Below, in pieces: positions 3,488-10,072 of a DNA stretch of 64,000 bases. Both the position numbers and the translations under genes were made by a program. The DNA is taken from positions 204,740 to 268,739 of the IMG/VR virus record IMGVR_UViG_3300032296_003307, one strand, 5' to 3'. Each line of letters starts with the position of its first letter. The first letter of the stretch is position 1. The notes below the pieces were generated by a model, which was not told where the DNA came from, made no database searches, and saw only the letters and a list, made by a program, of their open reading frames with translations.

Positions 3488-3493
3488 CAAAAC

Positions 3494-3628
3494 ATCTCCG
3501 TAACTGTTAAAACGGTGAGTGGGTAAATGATGGTTGATTGGTCTGACACTACTTATACTAGTTTGTAGAGAAAAGTCAGAGCACTAAACAAGTAATTTAC
3601 AAGATGGGTTCGATTCCCATCGGAGATT
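3494..3628 (+). ncRNA. tRNA-like RNA with a greatly extended central arm
   Basis: Acceptor ATCTCCG/CGGAGAT, T-arm ATGGG-TTCGATT-CCCAT, mini D-arm ACTG/CGGT, nested helices GTAAAT/ATTTAC, TCTGAC/GTCAGA and CTAC/GTAG. Confidence 0.7.
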
Positions 3629-3634
3629 CAAAAT

Positions 3635-3708: not shown

Positions 3709-3757
3709 CAAACTCAAGGAGTAATTAACCTTGAACTGTCAGGTTCGAAACTGACGA

Positions 3758-3849
3758 TTGATTATGGTGTAATAGGGCACACTGGCCTTAGTTGCTTCTT
3801 AACAGAAGTGGACGGGGCTGGGGATTGGGTTCGATTCCCTTTAATCAGC
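3758..3849 (+). ncRNA. tRNA-like RNA with an elongated anticodon arm
   Basis: TTGATTA/TAATCAG acceptor, D-arm GTGT-AATAGG-GCAC, long arm CTGGCC...GCTTCT-TAAC-AGAAGT...GGCTGG, T-arm GGG-TTCGATT-CCC. Confidence 0.7.
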
Positions 3850-3853
3850 AAAT

Positions 3854-4382
3854 GACCCCACAATTAACAGTAGTACTCGACTGTTATGGTGTGTGAACCC
3901 GACTTGAAGTCTTCGGGGCTATGGGGGATAGATACACTTGACGTGAAATTTGTATAACCTCTTATAAACGGGGTTAACCGACATGGGGAAGTTCAGTCGG
4001 GTACATCGGGAACAAGTATGACTGAGTCCCCCATTATGGATTAAGGGGGTTAGGGGCTTTAATTAGTCGTAATACAATCCACAAGTTGTAGAAACACTGG
4101 ACAATTCTACAATATACACTCTTCTTCCGAGTGAGACCAGACACGTAACTATGTGGTAGGGTGAAGATGTCCTGAGGGTAATATCGTTGTTAATTGTAAG
4201 GCTTATGGTCCGAAAGGATAAGTTGAAACCCAAAGGCACAACGGTATGATAGTACAGACCTACCTTGGATGGTTACTATGTTCTGACGAATCTTGGAAAT
4301 ATAGGTAGGGATATTAATTCGCCAACTATTAAAACTTAAAGGTGTTCCTATAATGGCGTAGGGATGATTCAACACCTTTTTT
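3854..4382 (+). ncRNA. Large structured non-coding RNA candidate (~520 nt)
   Basis: No credible ORF, GC content above the flanks, many helices including a long-range 10-bp pairing 3860-3869/4188-4197. Confidence 0.6.
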
Positions 4383-4386
4383 ACAT

Positions 4387-4467: not shown

Positions 4468-4538
4468 CGTGGATTGGTGTAATGGTAACATATTGGGCTC
4501 ATAACCCAAAGTTCCGAGTTCGAGTCTCGGGTCCGCAA
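4468..4538 (+). tRNA. Initiator tRNA-fMet(CAU)
   Basis: C1.A72 mismatch and three consecutive G-C pairs in TTGGG-CTCATAA-CCCAA. Confidence 0.92.
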
Positions 4539-4544
4539 CTAAAT

Positions 4545-7488: not shown

Positions 7489-7562
7489 AGACGGGTGGCG
7501 CAATAGGTTAGCGCAGGATTCTTATACAATCAAGGTTACGGGTTCAAGTCCCGTCTCGTCTA
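7489..7562 (+). tRNA. tRNA-Ile(UAU)
   Basis: AGACGGG/CTCGTCT-A, anticodon loop CTTATAC, T-loop TTCAAGT. Confidence 0.88.
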
Positions 7563-7566
7563 CTTC

Positions 7567-9686: not shown

Positions 9687-9691
9687 GTTTG

Positions 9692-10072
9692 TGGAGGTGG
9701 AGGGTATCGAACCCTCGTCCAGTCTACCTTGACTGTAAGGTACTACACGTTTAGGTTAACATTTGCTAATGTTCCAAACTTCACAATTCCCTTATTTTAT
9801 AGTGGTTCGGTTTACTGAGAACTAATCCTCCACTTGTTTCTTTTAAGATAGAAACCACACCTCTAAAGGACTTATGTTCCTAGGTTAATGTCCTCCCGAC
9901 CTGAGTGTTATAGCGATTAGGCTACAACTGAAGCCTCTTCACGGAACAAACCGCAAGCTGCCATGTTATTTAAAACGTTGCCGTCTAATTGGTTAAATCA
10001 GTTTTTAATGAGTTAATTCAGCTCATACGTGCACCTTACCTTCAAAAATACCTGTCAAATCCAGTCACCCCC
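9692..10072 (-). ncRNA. ssrA: tmRNA
   Basis: 5' GGGGGTGACTGGATTTGAC, 3' GAGGG-TTCGATA-CCCTC-CACCTCC-A with G3.U70. Tag ORF 9982-9917 encodes (A)GNVLNNMAACGLFREEASVVA. Confidence 0.92.

What the first reader, a model, noticed from the sequence alone, without database searches (positions are those of the whole stretch)
3714..3849. Second elongated tRNA-like RNA, preceded by an orphan two-hairpin unit with a T-loop
Seen: 3758-3849 has acceptor, D- and T-arms, but its anticodon arm is about twice normal length and capped by CTTCT-TAAC-AGAAG, with no standard 7-nt anticodon loop. Upstream, TCAAGG/CCTTGA (3714-3734) and GTCAG-GTTCGAAA-CTGAC (3738-3755) look like an isolated arm plus T-arm. Inference: these belong to a family of non-decoding tRNA mimics interleaved with real tRNAs.
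Basis: partly seen in the sequence, partly recalled or inferred. Interest (0 to 1): 0.6.

Follow-up and report, generated by a model that had tools for sequence, protein, structure and literature searches.

The report
Conserved non-decoding tRNA-like phage RNA
Inside the tRNA gene array of a 269-kb freshwater phage lies a conserved RNA of about 140 bases, two small hairpins fused to a tRNA look-alike with no anticodon loop; it recurs in at least 59 sequence variants in other large uncultured phages and matches no catalogued RNA family, and its function is unknown.

Summary

Window 3714-3849 is one unit:
- hairpin H1 (3714-3734)
- hairpin H2 (3738-3755)
- a GA linker
- a 92-nt tRNA-like RNA "E" (3758-3849), with acceptor, D and T arms and a 40-nt hairpin in place of the anticodon stem-loop

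Pattern scans plus a covariance model recovered 59 distinct copies. All lie in tRNA arrays of large uncultured phages, mostly freshwater, with one copy in each genome searched that has it.

On the 59-sequence alignment, 96% of cells pair, against 26-49% when the partners are slid. 17 of 30 pairs show compensatory changes.

The H1 and H2 stems covary freely. These features are nearly fixed:
- the palindromic H1 loop UAAUUA (58/59)
- the H2 loop GUUCGAAA (53/59)
- the acceptor and D-stem sequences of E
- discriminator C (59/59)

The "anticodon arm" ranges from 15 to 80 nt and shows no consistent anticodon.

It is neither a decoding tRNA nor a pseudogene. It matches no Rfam family, no GenBank phage and no prokaryotic genome.

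Its acceptor end most resembles tRNA-His but lacks G-1.

Most likely it is a non-decoding tRNA mimic processed with the array. What it binds is unknown.

The parts
3714..3734 (+). Hairpin H1: stem 3714-3719 with 3729-3734, and a 9-nt loop AGUAAUUAA (3720-3728) that holds the palindrome UAAUUA.
   Evidence: Sequence and fold. All 7 modelled pairs show compensatory changes across 59 homologues. The loop contains UAAUUA in 58/59.
3735..3737 (+). Short H1-H2 linker (ACU). The last two bases are CU in 44/59 and AU in 13/59.
   Evidence: Alignment A7.
3738..3755 (+). Hairpin H2: 5-bp stem (3738-3742 with 3751-3755) and an 8-nt loop GUUCGAAA resembling a T-loop.
   Evidence: Fold. Homologues have 14 different stem sequences, and 4 of 5 pairs show compensatory changes. 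The loop is GUUCGAAA in 53/59.
3756..3757 (+). GA linker joining H2 to the 5' end of the acceptor stem. The A is position -1 of the tRNA-like part.
   Evidence: GA in 57/59 members.
3758..3764 (+). E, 5' strand of the acceptor stem (UUGAUUA). It pairs with 3842-3848, and the first pair is U.G.
   Evidence: The sequence is UUGAUUA in 44/59. Pair 5-68 shows U-A, C-G and U.G.
3767..3780 (+). E, D arm: stem GUGU/GCAC (3767-3770 with 3777-3780) and a loop carrying GG.
   Evidence: The stem is paired in 100% of cells and almost invariant in sequence. One G-C to A-U compensatory change occurs, for example in L004.
3782..3821 (+). E, elongated arm in place of the anticodon stem-loop. Lower stem 3782-3789 with 3814-3821. 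Internal loop AG/AC. Upper stem 3792-3799 with 3804-3811. Tetraloop UAAC at 3800-3803.
   Evidence: Fold. The closest relative L004 has compensatory changes in the lower stem and a different apical hairpin. Across the family the arm is 15-80 nt and has at least four architectures.
3825..3841 (+). E, T arm: three G-C pairs flanked by U.U oppositions, with the canonical T-loop UUCGAUU (3830-3836).
   Evidence: In the family, pairs 52-62 and 53-61 are invariant G-C and pair 51-63 covaries (A-U, U-A, G-C). Pair 49-65 is unpaired in 31/59. An extra U or C follows the T stem in 54/59.
3842..3849 (+). E, 3' strand of the acceptor stem (UAAUCAG) plus discriminator C (3849). It is followed by AAA, and no CCA is encoded.
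   Evidence: The discriminator is C in 59/59. The 34 members found without any constraint on this base (alignment A6) are among those 59.

Best explanation
Window 3714-3849 encodes one RNA unit. A fixed 5' module of two hairpins, H1 and H2, is joined by GA to a tRNA-shaped RNA, E. There is one copy in each genome searched that has it.

**What E keeps and what it has lost**
- E keeps what tRNA-handling enzymes read: a 7-bp acceptor stem, U8, a 4-bp D stem, the GG of the D loop, a canonical T-loop and a single-stranded 3' tail.
- It has swapped the anticodon stem-loop for a hairpin that varies between lineages, so it cannot decode.

**Most likely mechanism (inferred)**
1. It is transcribed with the phage tRNA array.
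2. It is handled by the same RNase P, RNase Z and CCA-adding machinery as its neighbours.
3. It then acts as a tRNA mimic. It occupies a factor that reads the acceptor end and elbow of a tRNA, while staying off the ribosome.

Its acceptor stem and invariant discriminator C are closest to tRNA-His. The most specific version is therefore a tRNA-His look-alike that lacks the G-1 needed for normal charging.

The invariant palindromic H1 loop (UAAUUA) and the T-loop-like H2 loop give a second, sequence-specific contact surface. That surface could serve self-pairing (a kissing dimer) or a partner.

**Shown:** the anatomy, the conservation, the covariation, the array context and the lack of any consistent anticodon.
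**Inferred:** the processing, the binding partner and the benefit to the phage.
For: **Structure and family**
- 59 distinct homologues. 96.0% of cells pair, against 26-49% with slid partners. 17 of 30 pairs show compensatory changes. 0 of 500 shuffles reach the observed score.
- Three independent scans, by H2, by the 5' part of E and by the 3' end of E, converge on the same composite.

**Not a decoding tRNA**
- The arm is 15-80 nt.
- ARAGORN gives no consistent anticodon.
- Rfam tRNA scores E at 20 bits, below the 29-bit cut-off.
- The genome already has all 20 specificities.

**tRNA core retained**
- The D-stem, T-loop, U8 and GG positions are conserved.

**Pattern of constraint**
- The H1 and H2 stems vary freely with compensation.
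- The acceptor stem (UUGAUUA in 44/59), the D stem and C73 (59/59) are fixed in sequence, as expected for identity-type recognition.

**tRNA-His likeness**
- Among 380 tRNAs from these phages, tRNA-His is nearest in acceptor plus discriminator: mean 7.7 of 15 identical, maximum 13. The next best is Pro at 5.9.
- C73 is otherwise almost confined to tRNA-His.

**Context and distribution**
- It is always on the tRNA strand inside arrays, usually starting a few bases after a tRNA 3' end, with varying neighbours.
- It is accessory: absent from G002 and G003, relatives with 73% terminase identity, although their tRNAs are about 84% identical to those of this genome.
- No phage protein tracks it, which points to a host partner or an RNA-only role.

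**Precedent**
- Phage tRNAs are proposed to act as supplements or decoys against tRNA-cleaving host defences (PMC13096335).
Against: - There is no direct evidence of processing, stability, CCA addition, charging or binding.
- In four freshwater metatranscriptome assemblies the composite is barely covered, at summed contig depth 2-7, so strong expression is not shown. Structured small RNAs are poorly captured by such libraries, and contigs cannot show RNA ends.
- The tRNA-His likeness rests on about 15 bases. E lacks both G-1 (it has A at -1) and G1-C72.
- A structured hairpin two bases upstream of the acceptor stem may hinder RNase P, so the assumed 5' processing is uncertain.
- The roles of H1 and H2 are guesses.
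- The protein co-occurrence test used only six genomes and BLASTP.
Confidence: 0.45

Rival explanations
1. Processing or punctuation element. E serves mainly as a handle for RNase P and RNase Z. Their cuts release the roughly 45-nt H1-H2 piece as the functional small RNA, or define the ends of neighbouring RNAs. Known parallels are mascRNA at the MALAT1 3' end and sRNAs derived from tRNA-operon spacers.
For: - The H1 and H2 loops are the most conserved single-stranded sequences of the unit.
- H1-H2 lies exactly between a tRNA 3' end and the 5' end of E.
- In this window E ends a few bases before a separate, abundant large RNA.
Against: - Any ordinary tRNA could provide the cuts. That leaves unexplained why E is so idiosyncratic and so fixed in sequence at its acceptor stem, D stem and C73.
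- What lies downstream varies from 4 to 1043 nt and is unrelated between phages.
- The large RNA occurs without the composite in L118-L121.
Confidence: 0.2
2. Aminoacylated carrier outside translation. E is charged, most plausibly by HisRS or another synthetase that ignores the anticodon, and donates the amino acid to a non-ribosomal reaction.
For: - Discriminator C is invariant, and the acceptor stem is His-like and fixed in sequence.
- The T stem is weak: pair 49-65 is mostly U.U, 50-64 is A-U and 51-63 is A-U or U-A. From established work on T-stem pairs and EF-Tu affinity, this would lower delivery to the ribosome. The non-proteinogenic tRNA-Gly of Staphylococcus is the known example.
Against: - E has no G-1 (A at -1) and no G1-C72, which are the main bacterial HisRS determinants (own knowledge).
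- No aminoacyl-transferase or any other tRNA-related protein co-occurs with the element.
Confidence: 0.12
3. A genuine decoding tRNA whose anticodon loop carries an intron or expansion that is removed or tolerated.
For: ARAGORN can force a reading of Leu(tag), or of Val(gac) with a 21-nt intron. In L004 the same conceptual splice would give Val(aac).
Against: - Across 35 members ARAGORN gives a call for only 3 in plain mode and 7 in intron mode, with six different specificities.
- Members with 19-20-nt arms have 4-6-nt loops, not U33 in a 7-nt loop.
- The arm has a 2x2 internal loop, not a bulge-helix-bulge.
- A 21-27-nt insert is far too short for a group I intron.
- No RtcB is encoded in five near-complete genomes that carry the element.
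- The genome already has all 20 specificities.
Confidence: 0.04
4. A decaying tRNA pseudogene, or a DNA-level element such as a protein-binding palindrome or a recombination site.
For: - H1 and H2 are inverted repeats at the DNA level, and their loops hold palindromes (TAATTA, TTCGAA).
- The element is missing from some relatives.
Against: - It is conserved in phages that share only 22-31 proteins with this one at about 40% identity.
- It evolves at the same rate as the real tRNAs: core identity 65-79%, against a median of 68-76% for tRNAs.
- The stems change by compensation while the loops stay fixed. That is the signature of a folded RNA, not of a DNA operator.
Confidence: 0.04

Closest known systems
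Phage T4 stable RNAs of the tRNA cluster (rnaC / species 1, 139 nt; rnaD / species 2, 119 nt)
   Same: - Non-coding RNAs encoded among phage tRNA genes on the same strand.
- rnaC has a canonical T arm near its 3' end and long extra hairpins.
- To my knowledge their function is still unknown.
   Different: - No sequence or model similarity. Model R1 gives no hit on rnaC or rnaD, and its best T4 hits are ordinary tRNA pairs at 15 bits or less.
- T4 has no H1-H2 module.
- The architecture differs.
- The window's other element, 3489-3634, looks more like rnaC than E does.
YrlA / bacterial Y RNAs (Rfam RF02553)
   Same: tRNA mimics with a real D/T elbow, in which a long helix replaces the anticodon stem. 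They do not decode. Some are phage-encoded (own knowledge of Chen et al. 2014 and Wang et al. 2018).
   Different: - YrlA is permuted. Its ends lie in the long helix and the acceptor-like stem is closed by a loop. E has a free acceptor end and a closed long arm.
- YrlA works with Rsr/Ro60. No TROVE protein and no RtcB is encoded in five near-complete genomes carrying the element.
- The Rfam YrlA model does not hit E.
tRNA-like domain of tmRNA
   Same: An acceptor stem plus T arm, with the anticodon arm replaced by a long irregular helix.
   Different: - E has no mRNA-like part and no pseudoknots.
- E has G3-C70, not G3.U70, and it has a full D stem.
- The phage has a separate tmRNA at window 9689-10072.
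- Presence of tmRNA does not track the element.
tRNA-His
   Same: The acceptor stem (U2-A71, G3-C70, G/A4, U/C5, U6, A7) and discriminator C73 are closest to the phages' own tRNA-His, up to 13 of 15 bases.
   Different: - Position -1 is A, not G.
- Pair 1-72 is U.G, not G-C.
- There is no GUG anticodon and no anticodon loop at all.
- There is an extra nucleotide after the T stem.
Eukaryotic and viral non-decoding tRNA-like RNAs (mascRNA; MHV68 vtRNAs)
   Same: tRNA-shaped, cut out by tRNA-processing enzymes, and not used in decoding (own knowledge).
   Different: A different domain of life, no homology, no 5' two-hairpin module and different downstream uses.
Candidate structured RNAs catalogued from IMG/VR (Fremin et al. 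2023, PMC10690425)
   Same: That survey lists tRNA-like candidates. [quoted passage not shown] My first two IMG/VR scans gave a similar count of contigs, and the composite often follows tRNA-Asp.
   Different: Identity could not be checked, because no supplementary sequences are held. That paper proposes no anatomy or function for the candidate.

Membership tests
Canonical decoding tRNA (Rfam RF00005) | Scores at or above the family's gathering threshold of 29 bits. | tested here: not met
   20.0 bits, with a 27-nt insertion in the anticodon loop. No hit in the wider scan.
Canonical decoding tRNA (Rfam RF00005) | A 5-bp anticodon stem with a 7-nt loop (U33, anticodon, purine 37), and one anticodon identity kept among orthologues. 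| tested here: not met
   The arm is 15-80 nt. ARAGORN calls a tRNA in 3/35 members in plain mode and 7/35 in intron mode, with six different specificities.
Canonical decoding tRNA (Rfam RF00005) | Acceptor stem, D arm and T arm carrying the elbow nucleotides (U8, A14, G18-G19, T-loop UUCRANY). | tested here: met
   Sequence and alignment.
Intron-containing tRNA (archaeal-type BHB intron or bacterial group I intron) | A bulge-helix-bulge at the exon-intron junctions, or a group I intron core of 200 nt or more. Removing the intron restores a 7-nt anticodon loop with a conserved anticodon. | tested here: not met
   The arm has a 2x2 internal loop and no 3-nt bulges. The insert is 21-27 nt here. 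No consistent anticodon emerges. No RtcB ligase is encoded in five genomes.
YrlA / Y RNA | Match to the Rfam model. Permuted topology with the ends in the long helix. Partnership with Rsr/Ro60 (TROVE domain). | tested here: not met
   No YrlA hit on E. The ends of E lie in the acceptor stem. No TROVE protein is found in G000 or G017-G020.
tmRNA | Match to the Rfam model. G3.U70. A tag reading frame and pseudoknots. | tested here: not met
   Only a 13-nt T-loop fragment matches, at 9 bits. E has G3-C70. It is 92 nt and has no ORF.
T4 rnaC / rnaD-type stable RNAs | Sequence or structure homology to the T4 RNAs. | tested here: not met
   Model R1 finds nothing at T4 rnaC or rnaD (L126 1909-2172). 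Only the general resemblance holds: a tRNA-cluster-encoded RNA with a T arm.
tRNA-His | Discriminator C73 and the His-type acceptor stem. | tested here: met
   C73 in 59/59. tRNA-His is the nearest isotype among 380 phage tRNAs.
tRNA-His | G-1 paired to C73, G1-C72 and a GUG anticodon. | tested here: not met
   The linker is GA in 57/59, so -1 is A. Pair 1-72 is U.G in 51/59. There is no anticodon loop.
Functional tRNA mimic (binds a tRNA-handling factor; processed by RNase P and Z; receives CCA) | Demonstrated processing, or binding to a tRNA-recognising protein. | not testable with these tools
   Only assembled metatranscriptome contigs were available, with low coverage and no ends.

The most novel reading that the evidence does not exclude
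The composite is a new class of phage counter-measure or host-manipulation RNA. It would be a tRNA-His look-alike that cannot be charged normally and cannot decode. Through its fixed acceptor end it would trap or divert a host factor that reads tRNA acceptor ends: HisRS, an acceptor-end-modifying defence toxin, or a tRNA nuclease. The invariant palindromic H1 loop would pair two copies, or pair with a partner RNA, into a higher-order complex, and the T-loop-like H2 would add a docking surface. The arm that varies between lineages would then reflect an arms race, or adaptation to different hosts.
Probability: 0.2. Interest if true: 0.8.

Novelty: new variant of a known kind. Interest (0 to 1): 0.62.

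Why it matters
- **An old open question.** RNAs of unknown role have been known in phage tRNA clusters since the T4 species 1 and 2 RNAs of the 1970s, but there has been little comparative data on them.
- **What this family adds.** It has 59 or more variants, and they separate what is constrained by shape from what is constrained by sequence.
  - Constrained by shape: the H1 and H2 stems.
  - Constrained by sequence: the two loops, the acceptor stem, the D stem and C73.
  - Free to vary: the anticodon arm.
- **A testable target.** This points to a concrete question: what reads a His-like acceptor end that has no G-1?
- **Link to current work.** If the RNA is a decoy or modulator of tRNA-handling enzymes or of tRNA-targeting defences, it adds an RNA-only tool to the phage-host conflict over tRNAs, an active field.
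- **A practical point for annotation.** tRNA finders label such elements inconsistently, here as Leu, Val, Thr, Pro, Gly or Phe. That inflates and distorts the tRNA inventories reported for large phages.

Tried and rejected
1. **Real tRNA or intron-bearing tRNA.** Rejected.
2. **Private insertion or pseudogene.** Rejected by conservation and covariation.
3. **Part of the large conserved RNA just downstream (3853-4385).** The two are adjacent only in this phage and in L004. By BLASTN the other composite-bearing loci have unrelated sequence downstream. The large RNA occurs without the composite in L118-L121.
4. **Y RNA with Rsr and RtcB.** No TROVE or RtcB gene is found.
5. **Link to tmRNA.** Presence does not correlate: G002 has tmRNA without the element, and G018 has the element without a clear tmRNA.
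6. **A dedicated phage protein partner.**
   - I compared all ORFs of G000 with four near-complete genomes that carry the element and one relative that lacks it.
   - Only thymidylate synthase fits the presence pattern in all five.
   - The next best fits are a non-specific endonuclease, a clamp loader and DNA polymerase B.
   - Nothing tRNA-related turned up.
7. **H1 loop pairing with the 5' strand of E's acceptor stem.** They are complementary in most members, but the loop does not change when the acceptor stem does (L097, L107, L123, L243), so this is not a conserved pairing.
8. **Extra copies of H1-type hairpins.** Hairpins with TAATTA loops are common by chance in these AT-rich genomes, and only one per genome is the H1-H2 module.
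9. **Hammerhead or other small ribozyme.** The GAAA and CUGACGA strings are adjacent, which leaves no room for the required stems. Rfam gives no hit.
10. **Cultured phage or bacterial carrier.**
    - There is no BLASTN match in 50,697 GenBank phage records.
    - The one 20-mer match among 185,579 prokaryotic genomes is a chance hit inside a coding region.
11. **Expression.** RNA-seq contigs cover the composite only thinly, so they neither support nor exclude it.
12. **Literature.** Searches found no description of this element. One catalogue entry may be the same motif but could not be checked.

Full report
**Setting.** The window is the last 64 kb of a 268.7-kb IMG/VR virus record rated complete, about 32% G+C. 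It carries terminase, portal and major head genes and a tmRNA. It also holds part of a tRNA array that supplies all 20 amino-acid specificities across the genome. Near-identical DNA occurs in lake, reservoir and other freshwater metagenomes from ten studies.

**The observation.**
- Positions 3758-3849 fold into a cloverleaf whose anticodon arm is a continuous 40-nt hairpin capped by CUUCU-UAAC-AGAAG (-30.7 kcal/mol, z = -2.8).
- The acceptor stem has 7 pairs, the first a U.G.
- The D arm has a GUGU/GCAC stem with GG in its loop.
- The T-loop is UUCGAUU, on three G-C pairs flanked by U.U.
- The discriminator is C, and no CCA is encoded.
- Upstream, 3714-3734 and 3738-3755 form two hairpins (z = -2.9).

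The tools disagree on what E is. ARAGORN says tRNA-Leu(tag), or in intron mode tRNA-Val(gac) with a 21-nt intron. The Rfam tRNA model gives 20.0 bits, under its 29-bit threshold, with a 27-nt insertion in the anticodon loop. No other Rfam family matches.

**Relatives.**
- An exact-match scan with the 3' end of E found one other IMG/VR contig, L004 (195 kb).
  - There the two hairpins are identical.
  - The D stem and the lower arm carry compensatory changes.
  - The apical hairpin is replaced by a different one.
- A scan with the H2 hairpin found 23 contigs, and 22 of them carry the whole composite.
- A scan with the 5' part of E found 25 contigs, including H2 variants.
- A metagenome scan added 22 more members.
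- I ran a further scan to test whether the apparent invariance was an artefact of my search patterns. It used only the last 23 bases of E.
  - It gave 43 contigs, 31 of them new.
  - 24 of the 25 new distinct sequences have H1 and H2 upstream.
  - The exception, L266, is not an E homologue.
- A covariance model of the composite (R1) scores all members at 84-161 bits and ordinary tRNA pairs at 30 bits or less.

**Distribution.**
- The element is single-copy in G000 and G001.
- It is absent from G002 and G003, which are 73% identical in terminase and about 84% identical in their tRNAs.
- It is absent from 50,697 GenBank phage records.
- It is effectively absent from 185,579 prokaryotic genomes. 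The one 20-mer match lies inside a coding region.

**Structure support.** On 59 distinct sequences:
- 96.0% of cells form standard pairs, against 26-49% when partners are slid by 1-3 columns.
- 17 of 30 pairs have changes on both sides, in 227 cells.
- No shuffle of 500 reaches the observed pairing, cell count or covariation score.

The pattern of constraint is the most informative result.

| Feature | Behaviour across 59 members |
|---|---|
| H1 stem | all 7 pairs covary |
| H2 stem | 4 of 5 pairs covary; 14 different stem sequences |
| H1 loop | contains UAAUUA in 58/59 |
| H2 loop | GUUCGAAA in 53/59, AUUCGAAG in 3 |
| H2-E linker | GA in 57/59 |
| E acceptor 5' strand | UUGAUUA in 44/59 |
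| E D stem | GUGU/GCAC in 56/59 |
| Discriminator | C in 59/59 |
| Nucleotide after the T stem | an extra U or C in 54/59 |
| T-stem pair 49-65 | unpaired in 31/59 |

The first two stems matter only as helices. The loops, the acceptor end and the D stem of E are read by sequence.

**The arm.** The "anticodon arm" is the opposite case. It runs from 15 to 80 nt and has at least four designs:
- plain Watson-Crick hairpins, as here;
- arms with a purine-rich internal loop followed by an AGUA/GAAA motif, which resembles a bulged-G (S-turn) module on my reading of the sequence;
- short 19-20-nt arms with 4-6-nt loops;
- arms that contain an extra hairpin resembling a T arm.

**Not a decoding tRNA, not a pseudogene.**
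- ARAGORN recognises a tRNA in only 3 of 35 members, and in 7 of 35 if introns are allowed. The assignments are Thr, Leu, Phe, Pro, Gly and Val.
- The arm has no bulge-helix-bulge.
- The insert is far too short for a group I intron.
- No RtcB ligase is encoded.
- The genome already has normal Leu(tag) and Val(tac).
- The composite is kept in phages that share only 22-31 proteins with this one at about 40% identity.
- Its core diverges at the same rate as the real tRNAs, 65-79% identity against a median of 68-76%. That fits a gene under tRNA-like purifying selection.

**Context.**
- The element is always on the tRNA strand inside an array.
- It usually starts a few bases after the 3' end of a tRNA, and that tRNA differs between phages: Asp, Met, Glu, Ser, Arg or Thr.
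- It is followed by anything from another tRNA 4 nt away to more than 1 kb of other sequence.

It is therefore an autonomous unit, not a leader or trailer of a particular neighbour.

**What it resembles.**
- Among 380 tRNAs from these phages, tRNA-His is the closest in acceptor stem plus discriminator: mean 7.7 of 15 identical, best 13. Pro is next at 5.9.
- Discriminator C is otherwise almost restricted to tRNA-His.
- E has A at -1 and U1.G72 where bacterial tRNA-His has G-1 and G1-C72.
- From established knowledge, G-1:C73 is the main HisRS determinant. T-stem pairs 49-65, 50-64 and 51-63 set EF-Tu affinity, and E has weak pairs there.

This makes a tRNA-His look-alike that is poorly chargeable and kept off the ribosome a reasonable lead. 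It is not a proven reading.

**Partners.**
- No TROVE/Ro60 and no RtcB gene is present in five near-complete genomes carrying the element.
- tmRNA presence does not track it.
- In an all-ORF comparison, the only protein found in every carrier and absent from the non-carrier relative is thymidylate synthase.

A dedicated phage protein partner is therefore unlikely. A host factor or an RNA-only role is favoured.

**Expression.** Contigs from four freshwater metatranscriptomes cover the composite only thinly, at depth 2-7. One contig comes from a relative with a different arm. This neither proves nor excludes expression, and contigs give no RNA ends.

**Conclusion.**
- The "orphan" hairpins are an integral, conserved 5' module.
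- The element is its own family, distinct from the other elongated tRNA-like RNAs nearby.
- The best-supported mechanism is a non-decoding tRNA mimic made and processed with the array. Its fixed, His-like acceptor end and two fixed loops engage partners still unknown.
- The main rival is that E is a processing handle and H1-H2 is the active small RNA.
- The closest precedents are the T4 rnaC and rnaD RNAs, YrlA and the tRNA-like domain of tmRNA. The element is not a member of any of these families.

Noticed in passing
window 3853-4385 (+): A large conserved non-coding RNA starts a few bases after E and ends in a terminator-like hairpin.
- It is about 90% identical in L004, and it is present in L118-L121 without the composite.
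- It has two optional insert domains and visible compensatory changes.
- It matches no Rfam family and holds no ORF of 60 aa or more on the + strand.
- Contigs matching 3868-4324 reach summed depths of hundreds to about 5,800 in four freshwater metatranscriptomes from at least three studies, far above the flanking sequence.
- Adapter read-through in run X16 marks fragment ends at 3868 and 4324.

It looks like an abundant, undescribed large phage RNA.
   Followed up: partly
- It has an acceptor-like stem AUCUCCG/CGGAGAU, a canonical T arm and a long central hairpin (z = -2.9).
- G001 has a homologue at 88% identity, with an insertion in one hairpin.
- It has no Rfam hit and is not related to E by model R1.
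- Its architecture recalls T4 rnaC.
   Followed up: partly
G000:C1:203841-204375 (just upstream of the window; L095 8841-9375): Three more odd tRNA-like genes of 107, 106 and 93 nt are seen only in ARAGORN's intron mode.
- Two of them have a tRNA-Leu-type acceptor and D arm plus long inserts.
- A similar element in another phage (L096 876-1010) passes the Rfam tRNA threshold at 39 bits, with a 23-nt insertion in the anticodon loop and a 45-nt variable arm.
- In several phages the composite directly follows an element that ends ...CCUGUCCUGACUAC.
   Followed up: partly
G000:C1:200495-200572 (outside the window), and the tRNA-His genes of G002, G017, G018 and G020: The tRNA-His genes of G000 and G002 have C73 and an encoded CCA, but T rather than G at position -1. 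Those of G017, G018 and G020 encode G at -1. How the first two obtain G-1, or whether they need it, is open.
   Followed up: no
window 4468-4539 (+): This tRNA-Met(cat) has a C1 x A72 mismatch and three G-C pairs at the base of the anticodon stem. These are the marks of a bacterial initiator tRNA. The window holds three further tRNA-Met(cat) calls and a tRNA-Ile(tat) at 7489-7563.
   Followed up: no
window 9689-10072 (-): A phage-encoded tmRNA scoring 99.5 bits lies on the strand opposite the tRNA array. tmRNA clears the family cut-off in four of the six other large phage records searched, with a weaker near-threshold match in a fifth.
   Followed up: partly
L108 8570-8723; L226 876-1030; L251, L252, L260: In these members the variable arm of E itself contains a hairpin with a T-arm sequence (for example ACGGUUCGAGUCCGU), so the RNA carries three T-loop-like hairpins.
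   Followed up: no
L264 2633-2768: This is the only member whose H1 loop lacks UAAUUA; its loop reads AAGUUGCUAU. It is a natural variant useful for testing what the palindrome does.
   Followed up: no
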